Shown here piece after piece: positions 21,855 to 56,103 of a stretch of 64,000 nt of DNA. The position numbers and the translations under genes were made by a program. The stretch is taken from NCBI RefSeq assembly GCF_030028105.1, contig NC_092382.1:99898699-99962698 (forward strand), given 5' to 3'. Below the pieces are notes generated by a model that had not been told where the DNA came from, did not search any database, and was given only the letters and a program-made list of their open reading frames with translations. The DNA is from Mobula birostris. Taxonomy: Eukaryota. Each line of letters begins with the position of its first letter. The stretch's first letter is position 1.

Positions 21855-22332
21855 CTGCAGCTATAATTGTTAGAACTATCTTTGCAATAATTATTTTTTA
21901 ATCTCTGTATATGTTAATTGTGTTTTTTCTTTATTTACTGCGTGTAGCTTCCTTTACATACCGGTTGTACATCAGTGTCCAGCTGTGTGTCAATAAGTTT
22001 CTCAATCTTGTGTCCATTCGCAGACACGGCACGCATCCGTGGACAGCCGACTGCTGGGAGTATTCGATACACTTCAAGTCTGCTTTTGTATCGCTTCTCT
22101 GACGACCTGCAAATAAAGGGTTAAATACACCCATCATTCCGTCGAACTTAATGCAGGGAGTATCCGTGGGGATTGTCGACGTCACCGCGGAGGTGCGGCT
22201 CTGGTTACCTGGTCTTATAACAGGTCGCCCTCACAACGACAGTTTCAGTGAGAGCCGCCAGTCAACGCTATCAGAGACCAGCGGCTGCAGGCAGAGGCTG
22301 GGTCGCGAACAGATATCTGTCCGATCGCAGCA

Positions 22333-24919
22333 ATGGATTATAATCTGCGAAATGCACCGCCCAATGCTACGGGAACTGTGATAAATATTTTCGGGCATAT
22401 TCAATATCTTTTTGAAAATTACGAATGGCTGACGTTGGACACTCGAATCAGTGCTGTGCTTATGGCATTCGAACTGGTTTACTACCCTATACTCGCCATG
22501 GTAGTTCTTCCTGGTAGGCGTTTCGTCTCCCCTTCATGATTAACGTTGAAATATATAAGTCAGCTTCTCTTTTATACCTGTCCTCCAACGATTCGCTAAT
22601 TGCAAGTCAGGTCTTTCCAACCAGTATCTCTTCAGCAAATATCGTCTGAGTGTATTTGATAAGGCACCCCATGCAATGTCTATTCTGAAGGTAAAGAGGT
22701 ATCTGATCCAAGGGAAAATTGCTATGTGGAGCCAGAAATGGCTGACCCACAGAAGGCAAAGCGTTCTTCTGGAATGTCATATTCTGCGTTGAGGTTGTTG
22801 ACCAGTGGTGTGCCTCAGGGATCTGTTCTGGCACCCCTACTTTCTGTGATTTTTTATAAATGACCTGGATGAGGAAGTGGAGCGATGGGTTAGTAAATTT
22901 GGTGATGAAAAATGTTGGATGTGTTGTGGATAGTGTGGTGGGCTGACAGAGGTTACGCAGGGACATTGATAGGATGCAAAACTGCGCTATGAAGAGGCAG
23001 ATGAAATTCAACACAGAGAAGTGTGATGTCGTTCACTTTAGAAGGTCAAATGTGATTGCAGGATATAGTGTTAACGAAATTAAATACATAAATTAACAAA
23101 TAGCTCCGACACCTGACCATTTAAGAAGCATGAGGCCACGTGGGCATCATCACTGACATGATCTATCGCCGACTCAAAGAGCGTAGAGGAAACTAACGGC
23201 ATGCAGAGGGATATTAAGTTCAGAGAATGAACCAGCGACAGGCAGATGGACTGAAAAGTTGGTAAATGCGAGTTCATCCACCTGGGAAGGACAATTGTAA
23301 GAACAGAATATTATTTACGTGGTAAACGATTGCAGTATGCTGCTGTGCGGAGGGGCTTTGGAGTACTTGTGCTTGAATCACAAAAGTTTGGTTTGCAGGT
23401 GCAGCAGACTGTCAAGAAAGCAAACGGGATGTTCGCCTTAGTTGCCAGAGGGATTGAGTTTAACAGCAGGGTGGTGATGCTGCATCTGTACAACGTACTG
23501 TTGAGGATGCATTTGCAGTACTGGGCAGTTCAGGGCTTCCGACTTGAGGATGGATAAACTGGCTGTGCAGGCGGTTCACCAGTTGACTGCAGAGCTGAGG
23601 TGCTTCGACTATGAGGGGAAATTGTGTCGATTGGGATCGTAGTCGCTGGAACTCAGAAGAATGAGAGCACATCTTGTAGAAGCATATACAATTATCGAAT
23701 GCATAGATAAAATAGTCGCAGGAAAGTTGTCTCCACTGGTAGGTGAAATTAGAACTACGGGACATGGCCTGAGGATTCTGGGGAGTAAACTTAGGATCGT
23801 GATGAGGAGGAATTTCTTCTCTCAGAGCCGGTACATTGTACTCACTACCAATTTAATAATGATCCTGGTAATCTCCTTCATAGTTACATTAATTCCATGT
23901 TCATCTCTGCTCTTGGGAGGGGTATCGATTAAAATAACTGCTTTCAGAGAAAGTGTCCATCCGAAAGTGTATTAATCTTCTATATTTCCGTCCGCACAGT
24001 GAACGTGGTGACAATCGTCATCCTGTCTCGGGGAAAGTGCGGTCTCTCCAAAGGCGTCACAAGGTACCTGGTTGCCATGGTAGCAGCGGATCAGCTCGTC
24101 GTTCTCTTCGATCTGGTATTGAACAAGATTCCAGTGACTTATTGGCCAACACAGTTTGACTACTGGTCAATTCGTCTTCCCGTGTGTAATATACACGCCG
24201 TTCTGTTCTACGCCGCCACGGACTGTTCTGTCTGGTTCACCGTCACTTTCACCTTTGATCGGTTTGTCGCCATTTGTTTTCAGGAGCTGAAACGAAGATA
24301 CTGCACCGGGAGAGCGGCGGCTCTGGTTCTGGGGACAGTGACTGTGCTGAGCTGCGTAAAGAACATATTCTGGTACTTTATGCTCGATGAGTTATATTCG
24401 TCATTAAATAGTTCCTTGCTCTGCCTTACTAGTAACCGTTCATTTTCTCAGCTGTCAACATTTCGACTGATTCATTTCCTCCTCACCCCAATATTCCCCT
24501 TTGTCCTGATACTCCTGCTCAATAGTTTAACCATCAGACACGTCTTCCTCGCCAGCCGAGCCCGGAGGAGACTCCGTGGTTCGCGGGTTGGCGAAATGCC
24601 CGCCGACCCGGAGATGAAGAACCGCAGGCAATCTCTCCTCTTACTGCTGGTTATGTCGGGGAATTTCATCCTGCTGTGGGCGCTGCTGACGGTGGATTCC
24701 ATATGGGAAAGCATGTATTTTCACTTCCATTCTTTTCCCCCGAGTTCTCTGCGGGAGCTGGGCTACATGCTGCAGCTTCTCAGCTGCTGCACCAACACGG
24801 CCCTTTACGCCGTGGTCCAGGCCAGGTTCAGGGTGCAGCTGAAGGAGACGGTGAAATCGCCCTTCTGTCTCATGGCAAAGTTCATTCGGCGTTGTCAGGA
24901 TTGCATTAATCCTCGGTGA
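22333..24919 (+). CDS. Two-exon class-A GPCR, GPR139-like chondrichthyan family, copy 1 (exons 22333-22513 and 24000-24919; 366 aa)
   Basis: Exon 1 ends YYPILAMVVLP + G|GTAGGC; acceptor ccgcacAG|TG AAC. 7TM with ILSRGKCGLSK, TFDRFVAIC (DRF) and LQLLSCCTNTALY; no stops. Confidence 0.9.
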
Positions 24920-25999
24920 CACTTCTCCCATACCGCCCAAGATATCCCATTGCATCTGGTAGGTTAATTGGTCATTATAAATTGAAAGGCCACTGGGACC
25001 GTGGTGCATTGCGTTAGCCAAGGCCCGACAGTTGGGAACCTACTGGAAGTAGGTTTTTTGAGACTAACCTCTTCCGGTAGGCTGATGCGCGACACCGAGC
25101 TGCATTGGATAGCATGGATTCCAGTTTGTCCTGGACATAGAGGACAGAGCTTAGGGGTGGAGGGCAGCCATTCTGCATGTCACAAGTGTTGGAGATGTAA
25201 TGGCGTTTAATTTGGATGAAAATTGTGCTGATTCATTAATATGCCTCCAAGTGACACAAAACGTGATGGAGTTGGAGAGTTGAAGGTGCTCGGTAAAAGT
25301 GCAGATAGGTTGAAAATGTGGTCATAGAAATCATAACTGTGTTAAAGTAATACGACAGTTCGGTGTCTGTTGCTTCGAAACGATAGAGAAATACGGGAAT
25401 ATCTCCCCGGCGTGTAAATCTATGACTATGACCCCTCTGCTGTTTGATACACTATGCAAAAATAAAAGAAAAGTAGATTCGTATGCCGCCAGAAGATGGC
25501 AGTCGACAATGCAGAGATTTCAATGTGTCACCCGGGAATCGCATTTTAACTACAATGGAGAAATAACAGTCTGTAGATAAAGTTCGACAGTGAGCTGTTC
25601 TAGGATTTGTGATATTTATAAATGACTCGGATGCATGTAAATGAGTTGACTAATAATGTTACAGACGACCCAAAATTTAATTTGAAACATACACAAGGCA
25701 CTGGAAGATCTTCGGGTGGTAATTTCAAATGAACTCTAAAGAGCAAGACCTTTACACAGAGAGTAGTGGGTGCATGGGATGCACTTCCTGGTGTGGTGGA
25801 AGGGACACAAGGAGGGGAGACATTGAGGAGCTGCTGAGACAGACATGTGCCTCTGAGGAAAATGGAAGGACATGCTGATAATTCAAGCAGATAAGATTGG
25901 TTAGTCATTAGGTTACTTATCTAACTGGTACAGCGGGACTTTGTGGGCCGACGGGACTGCTCTGGTGCTGTCATGTTCCAATGAAGAGAATGAACAGCT

Positions 26000-27000
26000 G
26001 ACACTTTGGAGAGACTTTTTCTGGATTGGAAAGGTCAAGGGGCTGGCTGAGGGGACGATGAGGTGGATTACCTACTGACGGGGGGGGGGGTGAAAATAAG
26101 TGATGGACAGTGTAGGATCAGGTGGGGTATGTAAAAAACTGAGCGGTGATCGGCGGAAACTGTGCGAGAACGTAGATGTGGGAACCTGAGGACACCGGCT
26201 AGTATACGAAAGCGAGGAAGGGGGTTCACCGGGGGAGAAGATGGGTAAGTGAGCTGAGAACAAGAAACGACAGAGGAACCAGGAACGTGGATGGAACTGG
26301 AGAAAATAGTGAGAGGGGACAAAGGAGTTGGTGCTGGAGAAATCGATGTTCATACACGTAGGTAGTAAACTACCCAGACAGAATACGAACTGTTTCCCCT
26401 AAAAAATATCATTCCAGCCACAAAGACCGTGGTCAGGCCCTTAGCCTAACGGTTAGGGTCGGAGATCTGAGATCATTTGTAGTGTCCTCAGTAAGGACAA
26501 TCTGTATGTCCCACTCGTTCAATGTGCTCGTGTTCACCATCTGTCTTTTCACACTTAAAAGAGCTGTCCGGTTGGTTAATTACTTTTTGCAAATTGTTCC
26601 CTGATTAATTTAGGGTGAAATCGCATTCTCTGATATTTGTTGGGGCGGCGCTCGATTTGTAATTATAATAAATATTTCAGGAATAAACTCTCAGTATGGG
26701 AATAGGAAGATGGAGTAGATTTGCTGACCAGAGGCAGTTCTAACTATTGCGAACGACGGTGCCGAGGGACTCGCAGAAACGTTCCCCTGTAATCATTCGG
26801 ATCTCACCGAAGAGGTGGAGGCCGCGCTGCACTGGCAACTCCGGGTACAGCAGGCGAAACCGGCAGACTGGCAGGTGGAGTGTCACCTCAGCAGAAAGGC
26901 ACCTGAACGTGGGTGCGGGAGTCCCTGCGGGCCGGCGCAGCACAGGTCCCGCATGCAGGGTTCAGCGCCAGGAGGCAGATCAGTGAGGAGTCATTGAAAG
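26000..27000. mobile_element. Penelope-like relics (also about 42.9-43.9 kb and 57.0-57.95 kb)
   Basis: Degenerate GIY-YIG-like peptide (GLHLFGEIRMITGERFCE) and PLE-type purine-rich sequence; approximate limits. Confidence 0.45.
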
Positions 27001-27431
27001 CTGCTGGAGCGGCATCGGAACCCGTACTGAGGTCACGGTTATGCAACCAGTGTATGGGTTCCTGTACCGGCTGTAAAGAAAATGTTCTTTTAAAGTAATG
27101 TGAATACATCCCAGTCCATCACGGGGAAAACCTTCCTCATTATTGAATACATCTACAAGTTTCGTAGTCGCAGGGAAGCAAAATCCACGATCAGTGATCG
27201 CCATGACCCAGGCCATGCTCTCTTCACGCTGCTGCCACCTGGACGGAGATACAGGGGCGTTAGCACTCACACGACCACGATCATAGCAGTTAATACAGCT
27301 CAAAATTTCAAACCCCGACAATGTCCTGCACCATGACAGATTTCCTCGTGTTTCTATGACATACAGACTGATTTTCAAGGGCTCCTGATCGGATAGCCTC
27401 GACAGTCATTGCTGTTGATACATATACATAT

Positions 27432-27433
<2 letters not shown>

Positions 27434-27505
<72 letters not shown>
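27434..27505. repeat. (GT)n microsatellite (homologs at 44341-44394 and 58387-58455)
   Basis: Direct reading. Confidence 0.95.
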
Positions 27506-27507
<2 letters not shown>

Positions 27508-37803: not shown

Positions 37804-38282
37804 TATACAGCTATAATTTTTAAGAACTATCTATGCAATAATTATTTTAAACTGTGTATATCACTATAGTTTTCTTTTTATTTGCTGCGTGTACCTTCCT
37901 TTTCAGTCTGGTTGCATATCAGTGTCCAGCTGTGTGTCAAAAAGTTTCTTAGTTTTGTGTCCATTTACAGACAGGGCACGCATCTGTGGACAGCCGACTG
38001 GTGGGATTATTGTATACACTTGCAATCTGCTTTGGTATTGCTTCTCTGACAGCCTTCAGATAAAGGGTTAATTGCACCTGTCATTCCAGAGAGTTTAATG
38101 AAGGGAGTTTCCGTGGGGATTGTCGTCGTCACCGCGGAGGTGTGGCTGCTGGTTACCTTTTCTATTAATATGTCTCTCTCACAACGTCAGTTTCAGAGAG
38201 AGCCACCAGTCTACGCTATCAGAGACTAGAGGCTGCAGGCAGAGAGAAGACAGAGGCTGGATCGGGAACACGAATCCCAGCA

Positions 38283-41200
38283 ATGGATTATAACCCTGGA
38301 ACTACATCGCCCAATGCTACGGAAATTGCGAAGTACGTTTTCTTGCTGTATCCACATCTTGTTGATGATTACCAATGGCTGATTTTGGACACCCGAATCA
38401 GTCTCCTCCTTCGGAGAGTCAAAGAGTTTTACTACCCTGCACTCGCAATCGTAGCTCTTCTTGGTAAGTGTTTCGTCTCTTCCTCATGATTATGTTGAAA
38501 AATAGAATTTAGCTTCTCATTCATCCTGTATTGTAACGACTCGCTAATTGCAAGGCAGGTCTTTCCAACCGGTATCGCTTCAGCAAACATCGGCTGAGTG
38601 TATTTGATAAGGTACCCCATGCAAGTCTTATTGTGAAATTTAGGAGGCATTTCATCCAAGGGGACATTGCTATGCCGATACAGAAATGGCTTATCCACAG
38701 AAGGCAAAGTGTTGTTGTAGACTGTCATATTCTGCATTGAGGTTGTTGACCAGTGGTGTGGTTCAGGAATCTGTTCTGACACTCCTACTCTTGCTGATTT
38801 TTATAAATGACCTGGATGAGGAAGTGGAGCGATGGGTCAGTACATTTGGTAATGAAAGAAGATTGGGGGCGCTGTGGACAGTGTGGAGGGCTGTCAGAGG
38901 TTACAGCTGGAGTTTGAGAGGATGCAAAACTGCGTTAAGAAGAGCCAGTTGGAGTTCAACATGAGAGACGTTCTTTTAGGTAGGGTAAATATGTTGGCAG
39001 AATAGAGTATTAGCGGAATTAATTTAAAAATAAATTAATAAACAAACAAATAGCTTATGTCACGTCACTCGCAACACAAATATATAATTGTGTCAGATTT
39101 TACAAACAAACAAACAAACATGTAATACATTCTGGTCAGCAATAGCGAAAACTATTCAAGTGACTAACTTAACCAGCAGTTAACTGCTATGCGACAACCC
39201 CGGAACAGTTCTTAAAGTGGTAAATTCGAACACAGTATTAAAATGGTAACTTCGAAAGCCCAAGTGATTTACACAGTCAATCAGGAGAGATGTCTCTGGA
39301 AACGGCTGTCTTCGAGACGTGACGTTACTTCTGATTCTGTCCAATAGATTCACAGCGAAGGAAATCAAATGGTTTAAATAAACTGACCTTGTCCTGGCGA
39401 ATGAACATTGCACAAACCTTCCTAATCTTACAAGGTACTGAACGACATCATGGTCACAAGACTGTCACAAGATACCCACCAGTTATGTAATACTCCAACG
39501 TCTCACCAGTTAAAAAGCATAAGGGTACGTGGGCATCATCACTGCCATGATCTATCGACGCCACAAAGAGTGCAGAGGAAACTGACAACATGCAGAGGGA
39601 TATTAATATGTTCAGCGAATGTAGCAGCGTCTGGCAGATGGAGTGCAAAGTTGGTAAATGCGAGGTTATCGAATGGGAAGGACAATTGTAAGAACAGAAT
39701 ATTATTTACGTGGTAAACGATTGCAGTATGCTGCTGTGCGGAGGGGCTTTGGAGTACTTGTGCTTGAATCACAAAAGTTTGGTTTGCAGGTGCAGCAGAC
39801 TGTCAAGAAAGTAAATAGGATGTTAGCCTTTGTTGTCAGAGGAATTGAGTTTAAGAGTAGGGAGGATGTGCTGCAGCTGGACAAGGAACTATTGAGGAGG
39901 CATTTGGAGTACTGTGCAGTTCTGGTCTCCCGACTTGAGGATGGGTAAGCTGGCTGTGCAGGCGGTTCACCAGTTGATTGCAGAGCTGAGGTGGTTCGGC
40001 TATGTGGGGAAATTGTTTCGATTGGCATCGTACTCGCTGGAACTCAGAAGAATGAAAGGAAGTCGCTAGAAACATCTAAAATTATGGAATGGATAGATAA
40101 GATAGCCGTCGGAAAGTTGTTTCCACTGGTAGGCGAGGTTAGAACTACGGGGCATAGCCTGAAGATTCTGCGGACTGAACTTAGGACCGTGTTGAGGAGG
40201 AATTTCTTCTCTCAGAGGCCGGTGAATTGTGGAATTCTCTGCTCAGTGCAGCACTGGAGGCAACTTCGATAAATATATTTCAGACCGGCTGCCACTGATT
40301 TTGCATAGTAGACGAATTAAGGGCTATGAGGAAAAGGTAGGTATGCGGCGATGAGTCCATGGTCAGATCAGCCATGATCTTCTTCATTGTCAGATCATGC
40401 CAGTCCGAACAGATGGACTATTCCTGATCCTACTATTAATGTTCTTATATTCTCACTTTCTCTCATGTTTACAGCTGAGGGGAGTTGAATTTCTGTCACC
40501 GTGGTACTTGGTACATTAATTCGTTCATTACTCTCCTAACACTTCCCGTTTGCAACTCGTTCTCCTGGTGCTAAAGATCAGAATACGTTTCAGGCATCGA
40601 TTGCTATCACTGCTTTGCCCATAAAGCTCAGAAGTTAAATTCGACCAGCCGAGCACGTGCTTTCGCCGCCATTCCGTGTAGCTGATTCATTATCGCACTC
40701 AACCACATTCTGGCGCCCAGCCCCGTAGCCATCGGCAGCCTGATGAATAAAGCACCCAGCACTCTCCTCTGCCAATGGTTCCAATGAACCGTCTGTGCCG
40801 CTGAATTACACACATTCACCTGTCTCGGTCTGAAGAAATTAGGACCCATCTCCGTTCTAAAGGGATGTCTTTTTATTGTGAAGCCTCGTCTTCAGGTTGT
40901 AGACTCCCCCACGACAGAAGCAACCCTCTCCGCGTCCACGATATCTCTGCCTTTCAATGTTCAATAAGTTTCAATGAGACTCCTCTCATCCTTCTGAACT
41001 TCAGCAGGTGCATTGTACTCACTGCCAATTTAATAATGATCCTGATAATCTCCTTCATAGTTACATTAATTCCATGTTCATCTCTGCTCTTGGGAGGGCT
41101 ATCGATTAAAATAATTGCTTTCAGAGAAAGTGTCCATCCGAAAGTGTATTAATCTTCTACATTTCCGTCCGCACAGTGAACCTGGTGACAATCGTCATCC

Positions 41201-42090
41201 TGTCTCGGGGAAAGTGCGGTCTCTCCAAAGGCGTCACAAGGTACCTGGTTGCCATGGTAGCAGCGGATCAGCTCGTCGTTCTCTTCGATCTGGTATTGAA
41301 CAAGATTCCGATGACTAACGTGCCAATGGAGTTTCTCTACTGGTCACATCGTGCTCCCGTGTGTAATATCCACGCCGTTCTGTTCTACGCCGCCACGGAC
41401 TGTTCTGTCTGGTTCACCGTCACTTTCACCTTTGATCGATTTGTCGCCATTTGTTTTCAGGAGCTGAAACGAAGATACTGCACCGGGAGAGCGGCGGCTC
41501 TGGTTCTGGGGACAGTGACTGTGCTGAGCTGCGTAAAGAACATATTCTGGTACTTTATGCTCGATGAGTCATATTCCGCATTAGATAGTTCCTTGCTCTG
41601 CCTTACTAGTAGCCGTTCATTTTCCCGATCTCAGCTGGCAACATTTCGACTGATTCATTCCCTCCTCACCCCAATATTCCCCTTTGTCCTGATACTCCTG
41701 CTAAATAGTTTAACCATCAGATACGTCTTCCTCGCCAGCCGAGCCCGGAGGAGACTCCGTGGTTCGCGGAATGGCGAAACGCCCGCCGATACGGAGTTGA
41801 AGAACCGGAGGCAAGCCCTCCTCTTACTGCTGGTTATGTCCGGGAATTTCATCCTGCTGTGGGCGCTGCTGACGGTGTATTCCATATGGGAGAGCTTTGA
41901 TTCGATTCCCCCGAGTTCTCTGCGGGAGCTGGGCTACATGCTGCAGCTCCTCAGCTGCTGCACCAACACGGCCCTTTACGCCGTGGTCCAGGCCAGGTTT
42001 AGGGTGCAGCTGAAGGAGACTGTGAAATCGCCCTTACGCCTCATGGCAAAGTTCATTTGGCGTTGTCAGGATTGCATTAATCCTCGGTGA
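38283..42090 (+). CDS. GPR139-like GPCR copy 2 (exons 38283-38463 and 41177-42090; 364 aa)
   Basis: Exon 1 MDYNPGTT..YYPALAIVALL + G|GTAAGT; same acceptor as copy 1; open 7TM exon. Confidence 0.9.
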
Positions 42091-44339
42091 CACTTCTCCC
42101 ATACCGCCCAATATGTATCATTTTATCTGGTAGGTTATTATAAATTGAAGGGCTACTGGGACCACTGGTTATTATAAATTGAAGGGCGAATGGGACGTGA
42201 TGGAATTGGAGATTTTGAAGGAGGCTGGTAAAAGTGCAGATGGGTTGAAACTGTGGTCACAGAAATCATAACTGTGTCAAAGTAATACGGTAGTTCAGTG
42301 TCTGTTGCTTCGAAACGGTTGAGAAATAGGGGAATATCTCCCAGGCAGGTAAGTCTATGACTATGACGCCTCTGGTTTTTGATAACACTATGCAAACATA
42401 AAAGAAAAGTAGATTCGTGTGCCAGCAGAAGATGGCAGTCGACAATGCCGAGATTTCAATGTTGTCACCCGGGAATCGCATTTTAATTACAAAGGAGAAA
42501 TAACAGTCTGTAGAATAAGTTCGACAGTGAGTTGTTCCGGGATTTGTGAGACATATAAATAACTTGGATGCATGTGAATGAGTTGACTAATAATCTTGCG
42601 GACGACACAAACAATTTAACTTACGCAAGGCGCCGGAGGATCTTCGGGCGGTAATTTCAAATGAACTCGAAAGAGCAAGACCTTTACACAGAGAGTAGTG
42701 GGTGCATGGGATGCACTTCCTGGTGTGGTGGTGGGGACACAAGGAGGGGAGACATTGAGGAGCTGCTGATACAGACATGTGCCTCTGAGGAAAATGGAAG
42801 GACATGCTGATAATTCAAGCAGATAAGATTGGTTAGTCATTAGGTTACTTATCTAACTGGTACAGTGCGACTTTGTGGGCCGACGGGACTGCTCTGGTGC
42901 TGTCATGTTCCAATGAAGAGAATGAACAGCTGACACTTTGGAGAGACTTTTTCTGGATTGGAAAGGTCAAGGGGCCGGCTCAGGGTACGATGAGGTGCAT
43001 TAACAACTGACGGGGGGGGCGGCGCGGTGTGAAAATAAGTGATGGACAGTGTAGGATCGGGCGGGGTGATGTAGGAAACTGAGCGGTGATCGGCGGAAAC
43101 TGTACGAGAACATAGATGTGGGAACCTGAGGACACTGGCTAGTACACGAAAGCGAGGAAGGGGGTTCACCGGGGGAGAAGATGGGTAAGTGAGCTGAGAA
43201 CAAGAAACGAGAGAGGAACCAGGAACGTGATGGAACAGGAGAGAGTAGTGAGTGAGGACAAAGGAGTTGGTGCTGGAGAAATCGCTGTTCATACCCGTTG
43301 GTAGTAAACTACCCAGACAGAATACGAACTGTTTCCCCTAAAAATATCATTCCAGCAGCAAAGACCGTGGTCAGGCTCTTAACCTAACGGTTAGGGTCGG
43401 AGTTCTGAGATCAATTGCAGTGTTCTCGGTAAGGACAATCTGTGTGTCCCACTCGTTCAATGCGCTCGTATTCACCATCTGTCTTTCCACACTTAAAAGA
43501 GCTGTCCGGTTGGTTAATTACTTTTTGTAAATTGTTCCTTGATTAATTTACGGTTAAAGTGCATTCTCTGATATTTGTTGGGGCGGCGCTCGATTTGTAA
43601 GTATAATAAATATTTAAGGAATAAACTCTCAGTATGGGAATAGGAAGATGGAGTAGATTTGCTGACCAGAGGCAGTTCTAACTATTGCGCACGACGGCCG
43701 AGGGACTCGCAGAAACGTTCCCCTATAATCATTCGGATCTCACCGAAGAGGTGGAGGCCTCACTGCACTGGCAACACCGGGTACATCAGGCGAAACCGGG
43801 TACATCAGGCGAAACAGATGGTGTGTCACCTCATCAGAGAGGCAGCTGAACGTGGGTGCGGGAGACGCTGTGCGGGCCGGCGCAGCACAGGTCCCGCATG
43901 CAGGGTTCAGCGGCAGGAGGAGATCAGTGCGGAGTCATTTTAAGCTGCTGAAGCGGCAGCGGAACCCGCACTGAAGTCACGGTTATGCAACCATTGTATG
44001 GGTTCCTGTACCAGCTGTAAAGAAAATATTCTTTTAAAGTAATGTGAATACAGCCCAGTCCATCAGGGGTAAAACCCGTCTCATTATTGACTGCATCTAC
44101 AAGGAACGCAGTAGCAGAAAAGCAAAGTCCATCATCAGTGCTCTCCATCACCCAGGCCATGCTCTCTTCATCCTCTGGAAGGTGATACAGGGGCGTTAGC
44201 ACTGACAGGACCGCCATCAAAGCAATTAATACACCTGAAAAATTCTAATCCCGACGTTGCCCTGCACCATGACGTATGGATTGATTTTCAAGGGCTCCTC
44301 ATCGGATGGCCTCGACAGTCATTGCTTGTTTATACATAT

Positions 44340-44396
<57 letters not shown>

Positions 44397-44866
44397 CGCG
44401 TGTGTATAGATGTTTTAAAAATGTCCGCTGAGGGAGTCATTTGTCAATTACTTGGAACATAGAAGTTCGGAACCAGCTATAAATTAAATGAAAAATACCC
44501 AAGCACTCAACAGTCCTACCTCGGCAATCTCAATATCCTCCACCGTCTTACATTCTTATGACTATCCAGGCGTCTCTTAAAATCTTCTAACGTATTTGCC
44601 TCCACGTCAATACCAGGCAGCGCATTCCAGGCATCCACGGTCTCAGAGTGAAAAAAAAACAACTATTCCTCACATCCAGCTTGAAACTACTTCCTCTCAT
44701 TTTCCATGCATAGCCTCTGCTCTTACATATTTGAACACTGGAGTACAGATACTCCCTATTTCTCTATCTATGCCTCTCATAAGCTTATAAACATCTGCCA
44801 AATCTCCCCTGAGACTCAGGCGCTTCAGAGAAAACGACCCGTTTGTCCAGCCTCTCGTCATAAGAC

Positions 44867-45487
44867 AAGCAACACACATAACAGTTGCTGGTGAACGCAG
44901 CAGGCCAGGCAGCATCTCTAGGAAGAGGCGCAGTCGACGTTTCAGGCCAAGACCCTTCGTCAGGACTAACTGAAGGAAGAGTGAGTAAGGAATTTGAAAG
45001 TTGGAGGTGGGGGGGAGATCCAAAATGATAGGAGAAGACAAGAGGGGGAGGGATGGAGCCAAGAGCTGGACAGGTGATAGGCAAAAGGGATACGAGAGGA
45101 TCATGGGACAGGAGGTCCGGGAAGAAAGATGAGGTGGGGGGGGGGGACCCAGAGGATGGGCAAGGGGTATATTCAGAGGGACAGACGGAGAAAAAGGAGA
45201 GTGAGAGAAAGAATGTGTGTATAAAAAAAAGTAACAGATGGGGTACGAGGGGGAGGTGGGACATTAGCGGAAGTTAGAGAAGTCGATGTTCATGCCATCA
45301 GGTTGGAGGCTACCCAGAGGGAATATAAGGTGTTGTTCCTCCAACCTGAGGATGTGGAACTAAAATGTGTGGCCACTGGGAGATCCTGCTTTACTGGCGG
45401 ACAGAGTGCAGGTGTTCAGCAAAGCGGTGTCCCAGTCTGCGTCGGGTCTCGCCAATATATAAAAGGCCACATCGGGAGCACCGGACG
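44867..45487 (-). mobile_element. Penelope-like element fragment with 8-bp TSD (CATAAGAC)
   Basis: CVRCSRCGLLYIGETRRRLGHRFAEH (GIY-YIG); TSD at 44859-44866 and 45488-45495; empty site in unit 1 near 27910. Confidence 0.85.
44931..44968 (-). ncRNA. Minimal type-I hammerhead ribozyme motif in the PLE terminus
   Basis: Minus strand UAGUC-CUGACGA-AGGGUCUUGGCCU-GAAA-C-GUC/GACUG: intact core, 5-bp stem I, palindromic ACGU stem III. Confidence 0.65.
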
Positions 45488-48400
45488 CATAAGACATGTT
45501 GTCTAATCCGAGCAGTGTTCCGACGTGCCCTGACTAGAGTTTTCATAATTTGCAACATAATGTCTTGATTTAAGATCCCTGCATTGACTGATAATATTAG
45601 GCATTCTAAAAGTCTCTTAATCACCTTGTTGACCTGCGTAGCCACTTTCAAGAGGCTGGGACCTTAGATCCCAGGGTAGCTCTGTTCAGCAACGCTCTTC
45701 ACGAGCTTGCCCAAACACTGTACTGTTTCTTTAAATTTACTTGTTATCAGCGTGCTGCATCGCGGATTTATCTGGGTTAATTTCCATCTGTCCTGTCGCT
45801 GTTAATATCTGCAACTCATCTGTGCCTCATTGTATTCTTTGCCAGACTTCTATAGTGGCCACAACTCCATCAACCTTGGCATCATCCGCAAACCTACCAG
45901 CCCACCCATCTAGTCGTTCATCCAGGTCATTTATATACATCACAAGCATCAGGCATCTCAGCACAGATCACTGCCGAGCATCACTAATTGCAGATCTCCA
46001 TCTCGGATAAGTCGCTTCGGTCACCTTACTCTGCCGTCTATGCGCAAATATGTTCTGAGTCCAGGGAGGCAATTGGCCGCCCATCCCTTTGTTTCTCCTC
46101 TTGAGCGAGTATGTCAAACGCCTGACTGAAGGCATGTAGACAGCATCCACTGCTCTACGCTCATCAATCCCTGTCGTCACCTTGTTAAAATACTCTTTCA
46201 AGTTGTAAGACCAGACCTGCCCCGAACAGAGCCATGCTAGCTCTCCCTAACCTGGCTGGGTTTTTTTTAATCTCGTAAATCCTGTACATACGAATTTTTA
46301 CCTCCTATCTCCATATAACTGAAATGAGTCTCATTTACCCATAGTTTTAAAAAGAGATAAAACATTATCACTGGCCAGTCCTGCGGGACTTCGCCTGCAG
46401 CTGGAGTGGACATGAGCAAGTCCATTAAGGCCCTAGTAATATTACGTCTTCCCTCTTGCAATTGTAACTGGGTCTTGGTTACACTGGCTGCTGAGGTGTC
46501 TAAAATGTCTTCTTTGTATGTCATATAAAATGGCTTCCTGTAATAATAACTGCGAAATAAAGAGTTCTCTATCCCCTGCTTGTTTGGGTTAATATTATTC
46601 AAAAGGAGACGAACGAACCCATGAGTGCCAATGCTATTCTATCTGTATGTGTGGGAACCTGGGTGAGTTCCCGGGTTTTTCGGGAGGAGAACCGAAGGGG
46701 AAGGACGTGCTGTACGCGCTGTGGTCGACCATCGTCTTTGGTCCCAGGGGCGGGTCGAGGAGGTCGGAGGAGATCGCGTGGTGAAAAGAAGACCCCGTTA
46801 ATTGAGCTCCAACGGTTGTGCGTGAAGTGGTTGAACTCTGATAAGTTTGGCGCCATTTACTTTCTTTTATATTATATCTCTATTAATTCCATAGTTCCAG
46901 TAAGTTCTATAATGTGTAATCTGCAAATCGTGATGTCTGATATTTCATGTGTGAGTTTAAACCAGGGTGTATTACACAGCAACTACGCAATCGTGAGGTT
47001 TGGTGGGCGGACGTGGTTTCCCCTCGATAAACACGAGAGGTTAGCAATCAGCGTTACATTTGTGGGGCTCGTTCCGGATTTGAACCCGGGACCACTCGCA
47101 CTAGCACTTATTCCGAAGTGCGAAAATTCACCCAACTTAACTCCTACACATGATCAACCGGTACTTCCTCGGACTCACACCAGTTGGAATCTTCTCCAGA
47201 TCCATCTCCGCACTGACTTAACGGGCGGTTTACACATCTTCCACATAATCCAAATCCCGGACGATTTTGCCTTCCTCCCTTTGTAAAGAGCGGTTTGACG
47301 TTTGTAATCTTCCAGTCCTGCGGGACATGGCAGAATCAAGTCATTCTTGAAAGGAGATGACCATTATATCCATTATCTCTTCTGCAAACCCTCTCAGAAC
47401 TCTAGGTGTAGTCCACCTGGCCCAGTTAACATTTTCACCTGAAGACTTTTGTGTTTGCCGAGCACGTCTTCATTGGTAATAACAATGTCACTCAATCCCG
47501 ATGCCTGGCACTCTCGGGACTCTGGCACACTGATCGCGCCTTCCACAGCAAACACAGAAGCAAAGAACCCTTTAAGTTAATAGGTAATTTCTTAGCCCCC
47601 ATTCCTGCCTCTGGTCATAAATAAGCAGCATTAGTTTTCAACTGTTCCATTCCCTGAGGCTCCAAGTGGATTAGAAAAGAGAATATGGAGTTATACCGAC
47701 CACATTACCAATTATTCGATGGGGAAAATTTTGGGTACAGTGCCCATAATCGCAGATGTGTAAAGGTCGTTATAGGTTATGATCAGACTGGTCTTCACGG
47801 AGGGAGCTCCGAATATAAATGCATTGGGCTGGAACTGGGAAACTTTTATTATGAATCCCCGCCGGGGCTAAGTCCACATTTCAGAGGTGGATATTTTATC
47901 GTTTGGATCTCAGTATCAGCATGTTTCTTTTTTATCTGAGGGTGAAGCTAAGTATGAAGCAGGACAAGGCGAGGCTCGGAAATATATATGAAGCGAAGCA
48001 TTGCAAATATCGGCAGGAGAAAATAAATGAAGTTTAATGTTTCGCCGTTTTAATTCGAGCCAGAAATGCGGAGGTTATTAAACAAAACGCGATTGTTGCA
48101 ACAAGGGATATCCAAAAGGAAAATGAGGAGCAAATGGGGAGCGAGGAGAATGGTGGGCCTTTTAATGAAGAAAGCAGCGTATCTGGAGACAGGAAGTGCT
48201 GAAAATCCTTCATGATTACCTCAAACCGGCATTCACCACGGAAACGGATATACAATATACAAGATCATGAGGCTAACGATATTATTGCAGGGAATGATGA
48301 TATTGTGTCAAAAGTGTTGAGACATTTTAGTGAACCCAACTCTGCATTGGATCAGTATCCCGCTGCCCCCATATCACGGCCTTTTTTCTCCTCCATCTAG

Positions 48401-51400: not shown

Positions 51401-52808
51401 AAGAATTAGACAGACTGGAGAAGAGGCAAAGAATTATGAAGGAATATTTTGTAGGGAAGTGCCCAGACTTACTCTTTGGCAGAGGGAATGAATGCGTGAA
51501 ATATTTCGTAAATGGGAAGATCACATGAATTCAAAAAGCAGAGTTGCAGAGCTACCAGACATTCTGCAGATTGAGTCAGTAGCGAGGGAGACAAATGCAT
51601 GTTCTAATTCATTTTCAGAGGATTGGTATATAAAGAGAACTCCTTCGCCATGCCATAAACTGTATACTCTCTGTATTGGCCTGGACTATTTTAACAATGG
51701 GGAGAATATTGAAACAAGCAGAGGTGCAGAGCATTTTGGGAAAATTCCCTGCAGGATAATTTGCAGAAATGCGAAGAAGCCAAATGCAGTGTTAGCATCC
51801 ATTTCCAGAGGACTGGGACATAAAAGCGAATCTTTCGCAACCTATTAATGTGCATAATCTTCCTAGTTTCCACCTCACAAGCACGTAGCACGGGCAGCAA
51901 ATCCTGGAGGTCCTGACTTCTAAATTAGCTCTTAACTCCTGGAACTGGCAGTGCAGAACTTCGTCACTCATCGTACCCATGTTATTGGTAACCCAATGGG
52001 CCACGATTTCCAGCTTTTCACACTCTCAGTTAAGAATACTGACGACTCGATTCCGAGATATCCCTGACGTTGTCGCCGATAGAACTACCTGTCAGCACCA
52101 CTAACAAATATCCTTTCACAACACCGTGAATTTCACCCTACCGGACCACCCCCCCCCACGCCCCCGCCACCTCGCACACACTTAGACACCGCTCAACGTC
52201 CACTTCCTTTCTGAGTCACAGAGGCAATCCAAGTGCCTGAGACCCGAACACTGTGACTGAACACTGTCAGTTGATTCTTCCCGTGCGCGCCCCATCCCAA
52301 TACTCCGCGACGGCATCCAAAATATTAAAGAACAATCTATGCAATAATTATTTTAATCTCTTTATATCATCATTATTGTTTGTTTGTTTTTTTTTTTTTG
52401 CGTGCACCTTCCTTTCCAGACTGGTTGTATATCAGTGTCTGGCTGTGTGTCAATAAGTTTCCCAATTGTGTGTCCTTTTACAAACACGGCAGGCATCCGT
52501 GGACAGCCGACTGCTGGGATTATTACATACACTTCCAATCTGCTATTGTATCGCTTCTCTGACGGTCTGCAGACAAAGGGTTAAACGTACCTGTCATTCC
52601 GTAGAACCTAATTAAGAATGTGCCCGTAGGGATTGTCAACGTCACCGCGGAGGTGTGGCTGCTGGTTACCTGGTCTATTAATATGTACGGTATACCTCAC
52701 AACGACAGTTTCAGTGAGAGCCAACAGTCTACGCTGTCAGAGACCAGCGGCTGCAGACCTAGAGAAGACAGAGGCTGGATCGGGAACAGGAATCTGACTA
52801 TCCCAGCA

Positions 52809-55800
52809 ATGGATCATAATCTGCGAAATATATCGCGGAATGCTCCTGGAGTTGAGCAGAATAATTTCTGGGCGTATCAATATCTTGTTGAAAATTATGA
52901 ATGGTTAACGTTGGACTCACGTATCTTTTATGCGCTTATGACATTCAGACTGGTTTACTACCCTGTACTCGCCATTGTAGCTCTTCCTGGTAAGTCTCTC
53001 GTCTCTTCCTCATGATTTACGTGGAAAAATATAAGTCAGCTTCTCTTTCATACCTGTCTTCTTACGACTCGCCAATTGAAAGGCAGGTCTTTCCAACTGG
53101 TATCGTTTCAGCAAACATCGGCTGAGTGTATTTGATAAGATATACCATGCAAGGCTTATCGTGAAAATAATCAGGAATGTGACCCAAGGGGCTGTTGCTA
53201 TGTATATCCAGAAATGGCTTGCAGACATTCATATTCTGCATTGAGGGCGTTGACCAGGGGTATGCCTCAGGGATTTGTTCTGGAACCCGTACACTTCGTC
53301 ATCTTTATAAATGACCTGGGGAAAGAAGTGCAGCGATGGGTCAGTAAATTTTCTCATCACCCAAAATTGGGGTGTTTTGGATAGTGTTGATGGGATGCAA
53401 AACTGCGGTAAGAAGAGGCAGATGGAGTTCAACACAGATAAGTGTGAGGCCATTCATTTTGTCAGGTTAAATATGATGGAAGAATATGGGACGAACGGAA
53501 TTAAACGAATAAATAAATACGTCCAACGGCTCCCCAGTTAAACAAGCAAAAGGTCACGTGGGCATCATCACTGCCGTGATCACTCGCCGACACGAAGAAT
53601 GCAGAGGAAACTGACGGCATGCAGTAGGATATTAGTATATTCAGCGAATGTACCAGCGCCTGGCCGTGGAGTGAAAATTTGGTAACTGTGAGGTTATCCA
53701 CTTGGGGAAGGCAAATGTAAGAACAGAATATTAATGAAGTGGTGAACGATTGCGCTATGCTGCTCTGCGGAGGGGCTTGGGAGTGCATGTGCTTGAATCA
53801 CAGAAGGTTAGTTTGCAGGTGCAGCGGGCTATCAAGAATACAAATACCATGTTTATGGAGGTTATGTGGCAACTGCACAAGGTACTGGTGAGGTGGCATT
53901 TGGAGTACTGTGCTGTTCCGGTCTCCCGACTTGAAGATGGATAAACTGGCTGTGAAGGCGTATCTCCAGTTGATTCCAGAGATGAGGTGGTTGGACTATG
54001 AATGGAAATCGAGTCGACTGGAATCGTACTAGCTGGAACTCAGAAGAATGAGAGGAAATATTCTAGAAACATATAAAATTATGGAATGGATAGATAAGAT
54101 AGTGGCAGGAAAGCTGTTTCCAGTGGTAAGTGAGACTGGAACTACGGGACATAGCCTGAGGATTCTGCGGAGTAAATTTAGGACTGTGATTAGGAAGGAA
54201 CTTCTTCTCTCAGAGGGGGGTGAATCTGTGGAATTCTCTGCTCAGTGAAGCAGTGGAGGCAACCTCAATAAATATATTTAAGACTGGCTGCCATAATTTT
54301 TGCATAGTAGTCGAATTAATAGTCATGAGGAAAAGGTAGGTATGCGGCGATGAGTCCATAGTCAGATCAGCCAAGATCATCATCACTGTCAGATCATGCC
54401 TGATCGAAAGCATGGACTGTTCCTGCTCCAATTATTAATCTTCTTATGTTCTCGTTTTCTCTCGTGTATACAGTTGAGTGAAGTTGAATTTCTGTCACCT
54501 TGGTATTTAGTACATTAATTAGTTCATTACTCTCTCAACAATTCCCGTTTGCAACTCGTTCTTCGGGTGCCAAAGATCAGAATACATTCCAGCCATCGGT
54601 TGCTATGACAGCTTTGCCCACAAGGCTCGGAAGCTAAATTCGGACATTCGAGCACCGAGCCTTCCCCGCCATTCGACCGTAACTGATTCATTATCGCTCT
54701 CAACCACATTCTGGCGCCCATCCTGTAGCCGTCGACGACCCGATGAGTCAAGAGCCTATCTCTCTCCTCAACAAAGGTTCAAATGACCTGCCTCCCACAG
54801 CCGTCTGCCGCGATGGATTCCACACACTCGTCTGTCTCGGTCTGAAGAAGTTACTCCCCATCTCCGTTCTAAATAGATGTCTTTCTATTGTGAAGCCTCG
54901 TCTTCAGGTTGTCGACTCCCCCACGACAGAAGCAACCCTCTCCACGTCCACGATATCAGGGCCATTCAATGTTCGATAGGTTTCAGTGAGGTTCCCCTCA
55001 TTCCCCTGAACTTCAGCAGGTACATTATAATCACTACCGATTTAATAACAGCTCCCAATAATCTCCTCAGCAGATACATTAATTCCATGTTCCTCTCTGC
55101 TCTCGGAAGTGCTGCAGATTAAAATAATTGTTTTCAGAGAATGCTTCCATCCAAATCTGTGTCAATGGTCTTTATTTCCCTCCGCACAGTGAACGTGGTG
55201 ACAATCGTCATCCTGTCGCGGGGAAAGTGCGGTCTCTCCAAAGGCGTCACAAGGTACCTGGTTGCCATGGTAGCAGCGGATCAGCTCGTCGTTCTCTTCG
55301 ATCTGGTATTGAACAAGATTCCGGTGACTAACGTGTCAATGGAGTTTCTCTACTGGTCACGTAGTGCTCCCGTGTGTAATATCCACGCCGTTGTGTTCTA
55401 CGCCGCCACGGACTGTTCTGTCTGGTTCACCGTCACTTTCACCTTTGATCGGTTTGTCGCCATTTGTTTTCAGGAGCTGAAACGAAGATACTGCACCGGG
55501 AGAGCGGCGGCTCTGGTTCTGGGGACAGTGACTGTGCTGAGCTGCGTAAAGAACATATTCTGGTACTTTATGCTCGATGAGTCATATTCGGCATTAAATA
55601 GTTCCTTGCTCTGCCTTAATACTAACCGTTTATTTTCCATTTCTCAGCTGGCAACATTTCGACTGATTCATTCCCTCCTCACCCCAATATTCCCCTTTGT
55701 CCTGATACTCCTGCTCAATAGTTTAACCATCAGACACGTCTTCCTCGCCAGCCGAGCCCGGAGGAGACTCCGTGGTTCGCGGGATGGCGAAATGCCCGCC

Positions 55801-56103
55801 GACCCGGAGTTGAAGAACCGGAGGCAAGCCCTCCTCTTACTGCTGGTTATGTCGGGGAATTTCATCCTGCTGTGGGCGCTGCTGACGGTGTATTCCATAT
55901 GGGACAGCTTTGATTCGATTCCCCCGAGTTCTCTGCGGGAACTGGGCTACATGCTGCAGCTCCTCAGCTGCTGCACCAACACGGCCCTTTACGCCGTGGT
56001 CCAGGCCAGGTTCAGGGTGCAGCTGAAGGAGACTGTGAAATCGCCCTTACGCCTCATGGCAAAGTTCATTCGGCGTTGTCAGGATTGCATTAATCCTCGG
56101 TGA
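52809..56103 (+). CDS. GPR139-like GPCR copy 3 (exons 52809-52989 and 55190-56103; 364 aa)
   Basis: Exon 1 MDHNLRNIS..YYPVLAIVALP + G|GTAAGT; acceptor ccgcacAG at 55188-55189; open 7TM exon. Confidence 0.9.

What the first reader, a model, noticed from the sequence alone, without database searches (positions are those of the whole stretch)
22333..56103. Tandem GPCRs with a hypervariable N-terminal exon on a near-constant 7TM exon
Hand counts for exon 1 (60 aa): copy1/2 27/60, copy2/3 27/60, copy1/3 38/60 identical. Exon 2 of copies 2/3 differs at only 18 of 304 aa. Exon-1 length, phase-1 donor, the W-L-x-L-D-x-R-I and YYP motifs and open frames are all kept, so it is diversifying, not decaying. 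This variable-head/constant-core design suggests a receptor repertoire with distinct ligand specificities. The many 'GPR139-like' genes of sharks and rays are, to my knowledge, functionally uncharacterised. With the small OR repertoire reported for cartilaginous fish, an unrecognised chemosensory or immune-sensing family is plausible (inference).
Basis: partly seen in the sequence, partly recalled or inferred. Interest (0 to 1): 0.8.

Follow-up and report, generated by a model that had tools for sequence, protein, structure and literature searches.

The report
Mosaic tandem orphan GPCR genes in a ray
Three neighbouring, intact receptor genes of a large uncharacterised shark-and-ray GPCR family differ mainly in their outward-facing parts, but the variable first exon against a constant second exon is mostly a recombination effect: the gene's 5' and 3' halves have different ages.

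Summary
There are three intact two-exon class-A GPCR genes on the + strand, each with a 181-nt exon 1 and a phase-1 GT..AG intron. Exon-1 identity is 27/60, 38/60 and 27/60. Exon 2 of copies 2 and 3 differs at 18 residues.

Exon 1 lies in a block of about 2 kb shared by all three copies (upstream DNA and most of the intron), and about 4 kb between copies 1 and 2. That block is 75-85% identical in its noncoding DNA too. Exon-1 dS is 0.23-0.49 against 0.04-0.08 in exon 2, and exon-1 dN/dS is about 1 (0.74-1.5). Site patterns show different genealogies along the unit (chi2 = 264, p = 1e-52). Copy 2 switches nearest relative at the intron/exon-2 junction. So the contrast mainly reflects recombination or gene conversion that made the 3' half younger.

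Exon 1 is still maintained. P(all three intact under neutrality) is about 0.005, there are no indels, and family-conserved positions are kept. Within exon 2, nearly all changes fall in ECL1-3, where dN/dS is about 1 and divergence exceeds the 3' flank. The transmembrane and intracellular parts are almost invariant. The same pattern holds family-wide.

No expression or splicing evidence was obtainable. 'GPR139' is a weak name (21-22% identity). The scan's first readers noted the same family at seven other places in this genome.

The parts
22333..22513 (+). Copy 1 exon 1. It has 60 codons plus 1 base and encodes the N-terminal tail, a short helix and the outer half of TM1.
   Evidence: ORF, ATG and GT donor. 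All 14 copy-specific changes are nonsynonymous, and its rate equals that of the flanks.
22514..23999 (+). Copy 1 intron (1486 bp). It holds a LINE reverse-transcriptase fragment at about 22684-23025.
   Evidence: GT..AG ends. There is an RT-like ORF and very deep repeat coverage in the run contigs.
24000..24919 (+). Copy 1 exon 2, from the inner half of TM1 to the C-terminus. ECL1 is 24131-24181, ECL2 24386-24463, ECL3 24707-24760.
   Evidence: Pfam 7tm_1, E = 1.5e-18. Segment mapping.
38283..38463 (+). Copy 2 exon 1, the most diverged of the three. It has 30 copy-specific substitutions (23 N, 7 S), 2.5-3 times its noncoding flanks.
38464..41176 (+). Copy 2 intron (2713 bp). Its last 174 bp (41003-41176) are about 96% identical to copy 1 but only about 80% identical to copy 3.
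41177..42090 (+). Copy 2 exon 2. ECL1 is 41308-41358, ECL2 41563-41646, ECL3 41890-41931. From its first bases onward copy 2 is closest to copy 3.
52809..52989 (+). Copy 3 exon 1, the copy closest to the family consensus. It is 32/60 identical to the Hypanus sabinus homologue but only 27/60 to copy 2.
52990..55189 (+). Copy 3 intron (2200 bp).
55190..56103 (+). Copy 3 exon 2. ECL1 is 55321-55371, ECL2 55576-55659, ECL3 55903-55944.
21860..23825 (.). The 'old' 5' block of unit 1: about 470 bp upstream, exon 1 and most of the intron. Its counterparts lie at roughly 37810-40260 and 52310-54260. It is 75-85% identical in all pairs, noncoding DNA included. Between copies 1 and 2 the low-identity homology extends further upstream, to about 19680.
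   Evidence: Self-BLAST, sliding windows, branch counts.
42133..46330 (.). The 'young' 3' flank of unit 2. It is 97.6% identical to 56180-60392 (unit 3) and about 88% identical to 25261-27908 (unit 1). Further downstream blocks are 93-98% identical.
17281..19277 (-). LINE remnant (reverse transcriptase and endonuclease) between the V-segment cluster and the GPCR array.
   Evidence: Pfam RVT_1 and Exo_endo_phos_2.

Best explanation
The window holds three functional-looking paralogues of an elasmobranch-expanded class-A orphan GPCR family. The family is auto-named 'GPR139-like' and is only distantly related to GPR139. The copies sit in a tandem array of 14-18 kb units.

The units are mosaics. 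A 5' block (upstream DNA, exon 1 and nearly all of the intron) kept an old divergence of about 15-20% in all three copies. The 3' part (exon 2 and roughly 10 kb of downstream DNA) was made similar much later. This happened by unequal crossing-over or gene conversion, with exchange points at or just before the start of exon 2, where conserved coding sequence supplies the homology. That is why exon 1 looks hypervariable next to a near-constant exon 2.

Selection acts on top of this mosaic. The exon-1 reading frame, its family-conserved positions and the transmembrane and intracellular core are under purifying selection. The extracellular face (N-terminus, ECL1, ECL2, ECL3) changes at or above the local neutral rate.

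Inferred function: a receptor repertoire that shares one signalling core and differs in what it recognises at the extracellular surface. Because the variation lies in the N-terminus and loops rather than in the transmembrane segments, the ligands are more likely peptide- or protein-like than small odorants bound in the helix bundle.

Shown: the gene structures, the block-wise genealogies and where the variation lies.
Inferred: the recombination mechanism, diversity-favouring selection and ligand diversity.
For: - Intact models with conserved splice sites. Pfam 7tm_1.
- Noncoding DNA around exon 1 is 75-85% identical in all pairs. Identity jumps to 94-98% at exon 2. The 3' flank is 98-99% identical for c2/c3 and about 88-93% for c1 against the others.
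- dS is 0.25/0.23/0.49 in exon 1 against 0.083/0.058/0.042 in exon 2.
- Counts of which copy is the odd one out, given as c1:c2:c3, differ by block: 5' noncoding 117:91:150, the 174 bp before exon 2 4:3:33, exon 2 33:15:8, 3' flank 210:18:16. Heterogeneity chi2 = 264, p = 1.5e-52.
- Dense c2/c3 differences stop within 10 bp of the exon-2 acceptor, while c2 matches c1 in the 174 bp before it.
- Exon 1 is maintained: P(intact | neutral) = 0.005, and invariant residues sit at family-conserved columns (p = 0.002). There are no indels.
- Variable amino-acid columns number 55/105 in N-terminus plus ECLs against 23/263 elsewhere (p = 1e-18). TM2, ICL2 and TM4 have zero nucleotide differences.
- ECL pN is 0.15/0.17/0.087 against 3' flank divergence of 0.090/0.089/0.015 (p = 0.03, 0.005, 3e-6).
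- Entropy across 30 shark, skate and ray members is 1.5-2.2 bits in N-terminus and ECLs, against 0.3-0.8 bits in TM2-7 and the intracellular loops; TM1 and the helix-8/C-tail are intermediate at about 1.0.
- Exon 1 and exon 2 similarities are also decoupled among Heptranchias perlo paralogues. Examples are exon 1 100% with exon 2 90%, and exon 1 75% with exon 2 93%. One exon 1 looks like a chimera of two exon-1 types.
- The Hypanus homologue is annotated with the same 60-aa first exon and spans 3.3 kb.
Against: - There are only three sequences, and no outgroup DNA could be fetched. The direction of exchange cannot be resolved: either the 3' half was homogenised or the 5' blocks were imported.
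- dN/dS of about 1 in exon 1 and the ECLs fits relaxed constraint as well as diversifying selection.
- Silent changes are also enriched in ECL codons (5/36 against 5/151 in TM, p = 0.02), and in c2's exon 1. So part of the excess may be older or imported sequence rather than selection.
- Counts are small and several tests were run.
- Noncoding alignments may understate divergence.
- There is no evidence of transcription or of the exon 1-exon 2 splice in this species.
- The function is pure inference.
Confidence: 0.68

Rival explanations
1. Exon 1 is a dedicated hypervariable 'head', driven by diversifying selection on the N-terminus, attached to a 7TM exon held constant by purifying selection.
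For: - The exon-1 frame, length, donor and motifs are kept despite 37-55% amino-acid divergence.
- All 14 c1-specific changes are nonsynonymous (P = 0.024).
- Replacement-site change in exon 1 exceeds the nearest noncoding flanks overall (50/138 against 211/905, p = 0.0015).
Against: - Exon-1 dS (0.23-0.49) and the flanking noncoding divergence are as high as dN, so overall dN/dS is 0.74-1.5.
- The excess over the flanks comes from c2 alone and disappears for c1 plus c3 (p = 0.40). In c2, silent sites are equally elevated.
- Exon 2's constancy extends to silent sites and to about 10 kb of noncoding 3' flank, which purifying selection cannot explain.
- Other family pairs with similar exon 2 have 70-100% identical exon 1.
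Confidence: 0.15
2. Neutral drift in redundant young duplicates. The N-terminus and loops are weakly constrained in any GPCR, the copies have no distinct ligand specificities, and the array is ordinary birth-and-death turnover with no adaptive diversity.
For: - dN/dS is about 1 in exon 1 and the ECLs.
- The number of invariant exon-1 residues (22) equals the neutral expectation of 23.6 +/- 2.8.
- No expression was detected in the three available runs.
- Loops and N-termini are generally the least conserved GPCR parts (established knowledge).
Against: - ECL replacement divergence exceeds the adjacent neutral flank 1.7- to 6-fold.
- All three genes are fully intact, with P = 0.005 for exon 1 alone.
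- The extracellular-variable, core-constant pattern persists across the whole family in sharks, skates and rays. This argues for long-term maintenance of many distinct receptors.
Confidence: 0.15
3. Assembly artefact. The near-identical 3' halves of units 2 and 3 are a falsely duplicated or collapsed haplotype rather than real paralogues.
For: The c2/c3 3' flanks are 98-99% identical over more than 4 kb.
Against: - The same units differ by 15-20% in their 5' blocks, with different intron lengths.
- Their exon 2 copies differ at 28 nt.
- The only N run (7252-7386) lies far outside the array.
- Related tandem arrays are annotated in other elasmobranch genomes.
Confidence: 0.02

Closest known systems
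GPR139 / GPR142 (vertebrate class-A orphan receptors activated by aromatic amino acids and some peptides)
   Same: It is the nearest reviewed relative by structure search. Rat, mouse and human GPR139 are ranks 1-3 in Swiss-Prot models (E = 1e-7), and GPR142 is rank 7. The GPR139 cryo-EM structure is the nominal top PDB hit. NCBI names the whole elasmobranch family 'probable GPR139'.
   Different: - Identity is only 21-22%.
- By sequence, GPR139 scores no better than the muscarinic M4 receptor (E about 1e-5).
- By fold, it is barely separated from peptide and opioid receptors.
- The family has its own 60-aa first exon, a phase-1 intron in TM1, NTxxY instead of NPxxY, and a near-invariant ICL1. 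It is expanded to about 100 clusters at 50% identity.
- The closest non-elasmobranch relatives are 'GPR139-like' genes of coelacanth (33%), salamanders and teleosts (28-30%), not canonical GPR139.
Vertebrate chemosensory GPCR multigene families (OR, TAAR, V1R/ORA, T2R) evolving by tandem duplication, birth-and-death and gene conversion
   Same: Large lineage-specific tandem arrays, many intact paralogues, recombination between neighbours, and one conserved signalling side with a variable recognition side.
   Different: - Those families are mostly single-exon.
- In ORs, variability is concentrated in TM3-TM6 pocket residues (my own knowledge).
- Here the transmembrane helices are nearly invariant and the variation lies in the N-terminus and extracellular loops.
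- Sensory-neuron expression is untested.
Mosaic concerted evolution with diversity retained at recognition sites (for example MHC peptide-binding exons, KIR/Ly49, plant NLR LRRs)
   Same: Block-wise discordant genealogies, homogenised framework segments, and recognition-surface segments that stay diverged at both replacement and silent sites.
   Different: The protein class is different (a 7TM receptor). The evidence here rests on three paralogues, and no population or trans-species DNA data are available.

Membership tests
Class A (rhodopsin-like) GPCR | Match to the 7tm_1 profile above the curated threshold | tested here: met
   PF00001 at 67.6-72.8 bits against a cut-off of 30.5, for all three exon 2 products.
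Class A (rhodopsin-like) GPCR | Seven-helix bundle plus helix 8 | tested here: met
   AF2 model of the 72%-identical Hypanus homologue: pLDDT 74, pTM 0.67, seven long helices and a C-terminal helix. At least 500 PDB GPCR chains match it.
Class A (rhodopsin-like) GPCR | Signature residues: N1.50, D2.50, the C3.25-ECL2 cysteine pair, D/ERY, W6.48, NPxxY | tested here: inconclusive
   Read from the sequence and family alignment. VN in TM1, AAD in TM2, C123 and the ECL2 Cys, DRF, and LLW in TM6 are all present. TM7 has NTxxY rather than NPxxY. Generic numbering was assigned by eye, not by a structural alignment.
GPR139 orthologue | Sequence similarity specific to GPR139 over other class-A receptors | tested here: not met
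   phmmer against PDB gives GPR139 E = 1.7e-5 and muscarinic M4 E = 4.9e-6. Identity is 21-22%.
GPR139 orthologue | Nearest reviewed protein by fold search is GPR139 | tested here: met
   Ranks 1-3 in Swiss-Prot AlphaFold models, at E = 1-2e-7 against 2e-6 or weaker for other receptors. This supports a distant relationship only.
GPR139 orthologue | Activation by L-Trp, L-Phe or related ligands | not testable with these tools
   This needs a cell-based assay.
Elasmobranch 'GPR139-like' expansion | A 60-aa first exon with the F-W..Y-L..N-Y..L-x-L-x-x-R-I..Y-Y-P module, joined to V-N-x-V-T-I-V-I-L-S-R-G | tested here: met
   All three copies have it, as do 40 of the 120 family proteins fetched, from sharks, skates and rays; 35 of them have the full 60 aa upstream of the junction.
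Elasmobranch 'GPR139-like' expansion | High similarity of the 7TM core to annotated members | tested here: met
   Identity is 84% to Mobula hypostoma, 70% to Hypanus sabinus and 55-60% to shark and skate members. 98 clusters at 50% identity score E <= 1e-30.
Chemosensory receptor repertoire | Expression in sensory cells, one receptor per cell | not testable with these tools
   Three same-species runs of unknown tissue gave no contig on exon 1 or on the unique parts of c1 and c3.
Chemosensory receptor repertoire | Variable residues line the ligand site | tested here: inconclusive
   Variation is extracellular (N-terminus, ECL1-3) while the TM helices are constant. The ligand site is unknown.
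Gene conversion / unequal crossing-over mosaic | Different genealogies in adjacent blocks, with sharp transitions | tested here: met
   chi2 = 264, p = 1.5e-52 across blocks. The transition lies within 10 bp of the exon-2 acceptor for c2/c3.
Gene conversion / unequal crossing-over mosaic | Homogenisation visible at silent and noncoding sites | tested here: met
   Exon-2 dS is 0.04-0.08 against 0.23-0.49 in exon 1. The c2/c3 3' flank differs by 1.5%.

The most novel reading that the evidence does not exclude
These genes belong to an unrecognised, elasmobranch-wide multigene receptor family with hundreds of genes per genome. It has an invariant transmembrane and intracellular core and a hypervariable extracellular face. 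Recombination plus diversity-favouring selection keep the extracellular face varied. On this reading it is a new vertebrate chemosensory or immune-surveillance repertoire, probably for peptide- or protein-like ligands, in animals that have almost no classical odorant receptors.
Probability: 0.25. Interest if true: 0.8.

Novelty: new member of a known kind. Interest (0 to 1): 0.5.

Why it matters
Cartilaginous fishes have very few OR, TAAR and ORA genes (stated in PMC11979771). A GPCR family with about 100 clusters at 50% identity, spread across sharks, skates and rays, did not turn up in any paper I could find under the name GPR139.

This window gives a clean worked example of how the family evolves. 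Recombination at the intron/exon-2 boundary decouples the N-terminal exon from the 7TM exon, and nearly all protein differences fall on the extracellular face. That tells future work two things. Selection analyses must be recombination-aware and partitioned. The N-terminus and ECLs are the parts to swap when testing ligand specificity.

It also warns against reading 'variable exon next to constant exon' as exon-specific hypervariability.

Tried and rejected
- Outgroup DNA. I tried to fetch the loci of the closest Mobula and Hypanus genes. All three look-ups returned no DNA because the files were too large. Exon-wise trees with outgroups and codon site models could therefore not be run.
- Splice and expression evidence. 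Only three same-species runs of unknown tissue were listed, and they may not all be RNA. Laid on c1 and c3, they covered only intronic repeats and 30-90-nt scraps of the most conserved motif from other paralogues. There were no exon 1-exon 2 joints.
- A Logan contig encoding a family member (L001) proved to be unspliced genomic DNA.
- Literature searches found nothing on this family: GPR139 with shark, elasmobranch or cartilaginous, 'GPR139-like', 'coupled receptor 139', and GPCR repertoire with cartilaginous fish.
- Intergenic ORFs of 150-220 aa inside the repeat units have no Pfam match and were dropped as probably spurious.
- c2's exon 1 as a decaying pseudo-exon was rejected. It is intact and matches family-conserved columns about as well as the others (16/33 against 18-20/33).
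- The invariant-column test was wrong because it counted leading gap columns. It was redone.
- Two strict regular-expression scans for V-domain motifs found nothing. A stop-to-stop frame listing then showed the V segments.
Full report
**What is there**

The window contains three tandem genes on the + strand and no further copies or fragments.
- Each gene has a 181-nt first exon (ATG plus 60 codons plus one base).
- Each has a GT..AG phase-1 intron of 1486, 2713 or 2200 bp.
- Each has a second exon of 914-920 nt.
- The proteins are intact and 364-366 aa long.

Coordinates:
- c1: 22333-22513 and 24000-24919.
- c2: 38283-38463 and 41177-42090.
- c3: 52809-52989 and 55190-56103.

The exon-2 products match Pfam 7tm_1 well above threshold. 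Exon-1 identity is 27/60, 38/60 and 27/60. Exon 2 of c2/c3 differs at 18 residues.

**Family**

The closest proteins are all elasmobranch genes auto-named 'probable GPR139'. Identity is 84% to Mobula hypostoma, 70% to Hypanus sabinus and 55-60% to many shark and skate genes.
- An exhaustive search against 50%-identity representatives finds 98 clusters at E <= 1e-30.
- After those comes a drop to coelacanth (33%), salamander and teleost 'GPR139-like' genes at 28-30%.
- Canonical GPR139 is only 21-22% identical. By sequence it scores no better than the muscarinic M4 receptor. It is nevertheless the top reviewed hit by fold.

So the name marks a distant relationship, not orthology.

The 60-aa first-exon module is found in shark, skate and ray members, often at exactly 60 aa. 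It has an N-glycosylation sequon, F-W, Y-L, N-Y, L-x-L-x-x-R-I and Y-Y-P, and it joins to V-N-x-V-T-I-V-I-L-S-R-G. NCBI's Hypanus model uses the same junction and spans 3.3 kb. This is indirect support for the splice.

An AF2 model of that homologue gives its highest confidence (pLDDT about 90) to residues 21-60. These form a short helix followed by a long TM1 that starts near residue 35.

I found no paper on this family.

**Why exon 1 looks hypervariable**

A self-comparison shows 14-18 kb repeat units whose identity depends on position.
- About 470 bp upstream of the ATG, exon 1 and nearly the whole intron are 75-85% identical in every pair. Between c1 and c2 this low identity runs a further 2 kb upstream.
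- Exon 2 is 94-98% identical.
- The 3' flank is 98-99% identical for c2/c3 and about 88-93% for c1 against the others.
- More distal intergenic DNA is 93-98% identical.

Nei-Gojobori estimates:

| Region | dS | dN | dN/dS |
|---|---|---|---|
| Exon 1 | 0.25 / 0.23 / 0.49 | 0.38 / 0.26 / 0.37 | 1.5 / 1.1 / 0.74 |
| Exon 2 | 0.083 / 0.058 / 0.042 | 0.049 / 0.046 / 0.028 | 0.6-0.8 |

Assigning each variable site to the copy that is the odd one out gives per-site branch rates:

| Region | c1 | c2 | c3 |
|---|---|---|---|
| 5' noncoding DNA | 0.074 | 0.057 | 0.095 |
| Exon 1 | 0.077 | 0.166 | 0.105 |

Exon 1 of c1 and c3 therefore changes exactly as fast as its noncoding surroundings. Only c2 exceeds them (p = 1e-6), and it does so at silent sites (7/42) as much as at replacement sites (23/138).

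**Recombination**

The odd-one-out proportions (c1:c2:c3) change drastically along the unit:
- 117:91:150 in the 5' noncoding block.
- 4:3:33 in the 174 bp before exon 2.
- 33:15:8 in exon 2.
- 210:18:16 in the 3' flank.

Heterogeneity is chi2 = 264, p = 1.5e-52. Dense c2/c3 differences run up to 10 bp before the exon-2 acceptor and then almost stop. In the 174 bp before that point c2 is about 96% identical to c1. Copy 2 is therefore a chimera that switches nearest relative at the intron/exon-2 junction.

The simplest reading is unequal crossing-over or gene conversion between neighbouring paralogues. The exchange points fall where conserved coding sequence provides homology. I cannot tell the direction of exchange without outgroup DNA, which was not retrievable.

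Three further observations fit this reading.
- c3's exon 1 is closer to the Hypanus (32/60) and skate (29-30/60) homologues than to c2 (27/60). Yet their exon 2 products are 94% identical to each other, against 72% and 60% to those homologues.
- Among family pairs with 90-95% identical exon 2, exon-1 identity is 70-100%. The window's pairs are the outliers.
- In Heptranchias perlo, exon 1 and exon 2 similarity are also decoupled, and one exon 1 looks like a chimera of two types.

**Exon 1 is nevertheless maintained**

- With the observed numbers of substitutions placed at random, all three copies keep ATG, frame and donor in 0.5% of simulations.
- The flanks show 20 gap runs per kb, and exon 1 shows none (P = 0.027).
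- The 22 invariant residues are enriched at family-conserved columns (odds ratio 6, p = 0.002).
- The number of invariant residues equals the neutral expectation (23.6 +/- 2.8). All 14 c1-specific changes are nonsynonymous (P = 0.024).

Conserved positions are therefore constrained and the rest change freely or faster. The data cannot separate relaxed constraint from positive selection.

**The variable part is the extracellular face, not exon 1 alone**

Exon-2 differences by segment:

| Segment | Variable columns |
|---|---|
| ECL1-3 | 27 of 63 |
| Transmembrane (exon-2 part) | 4 of 163 |
| Intracellular loops and tail | 8 of 81 |

- TM2, ICL2 and TM4 have no nucleotide difference at all among the three copies.
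- ECL pN/pS is 0.9-1.25, against 0.3-0.5 elsewhere.
- ECL replacement divergence exceeds the adjoining 3' flank in all pairs (p = 0.03, 0.005, 3e-6).
- ECL1 of c1 differs from c2 at 14 positions within 45 nt, inside a stretch that is otherwise identical. Most are multi-nucleotide codon replacements.
- Silent changes are also somewhat enriched in ECL codons (5/36 against 5/151 in TM, p = 0.02). Older or imported patches may therefore contribute alongside selection.
- Some motif states are shared with different Mobula paralogues in conflicting patterns. The ECL1 'YW' of c1 is shared with one Mobula gene, the C-tail 'FC' of c1 with two others, and the 'LR' of c2/c3 with the first. This again suggests shuffling of old variants.

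Counting all columns, N-terminus plus ECLs hold 55 of 105 variable columns, against 23 of 263 elsewhere (p = 1e-18). The same pattern holds across 30 family members from sharks, skates and rays. Entropy is 1.5-2.2 bits in the N-terminus and ECLs, against 0.3-0.8 bits in TM2-7 and the intracellular loops, ICL3 included; TM1 and the helix-8/C-tail are intermediate at about 1.0 bit.

**Function**

The invariant intracellular side implies one shared signalling or trafficking partner. Variation confined to the N-terminus and loops, rather than the helices, suggests recognition at the receptor surface. That is more typical of peptide or protein ligands than of OR-like odorant binding. This is inference.

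No transcript evidence could be obtained. The three listed same-species runs gave no contig on exon 1 or on the unique parts of c1 and c3. They gave only intronic repeats and short pieces of the most conserved motif that continue into other paralogues.

**Verdict**

The genes are intact, and the family is large and apparently undescribed. The headline contrast between the exons is mainly a recombination mosaic, not exon-targeted hypervariability. The more accurate and more general statement is a constant core with a variable extracellular face.

First readers of this scan noted GPR139-like arrays at seven other places in this genome. One of those notes describes 'hypervariable extracellular faces', which agrees with what I measured here.

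**Caveats**

- There are only three sequences.
- Branch assignment is by parsimony.
- Counts are small and several tests were run.
- Noncoding alignments may understate divergence.
- Topology segments were assigned from motifs and the AF2 model, not from an experimental structure.

Noticed in passing
window 173-13821 (+): There are at least four open V-type immunoglobulin-superfamily exons, at 173-643, 3658-4050, 5832-6281 and 13453-13821. They carry W-Y-R-Q and Y/F-C-A motifs typical of T-cell receptor V segments. One apparently degraded copy lies near 2225-2509. The GPCR array starts about 8.5 kb downstream of the last one.
   Followed up: partly
window 17281-19277 (-): A LINE remnant lies between the V cluster and the GPCR array. 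Its ORFs match reverse transcriptase (RVT_1) and, below Pfam's own score cut-off (23.3 bits against 27.4), the endonuclease family Exo_endo_phos_2.
   Followed up: yes
window 22684-23025 (intron of copy 1): A LINE reverse-transcriptase fragment attracts extremely deep contig coverage in all three same-species runs. It is a highly repeated, possibly transcribed element.
   Followed up: no
window 55405-55466 (copy 3 exon 2, TM3/DRF motif): Contigs from the three runs match only this 30-60-nt conserved stretch. They then continue into sequence typical of other family members (reading ..CQKVKTKYC..). If the runs are RNA, other paralogues of the family are transcribed in those samples.
   Followed up: no
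window 40261-41002 and 54260-55014: Copies 2 and 3 share about 740 bp of intron sequence, 79-87% identical to each other, that copy 1 lacks. The edge of this indel coincides with the start of the c1/c2 high-identity tract at 23826 / 41003.
   Followed up: partly
Family proteins P0001-P0003 (Mobula): The NCBI models of the closest Mobula genes lack the 60-aa first exon. They start instead at in-frame Met codons inside the intron just upstream of exon 2, as the 320-aa ORF at window 55141-56103 also would. These are probably mis-annotated 5' ends.
   Followed up: partly
Family proteins from Heptranchias perlo (for example P0024 against P0021 and P0012): One protein's first-exon segment looks like a chimera. 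Its first half matches one exon-1 type and its second half another, which suggests recombination within exon 1 as well.
   Followed up: no
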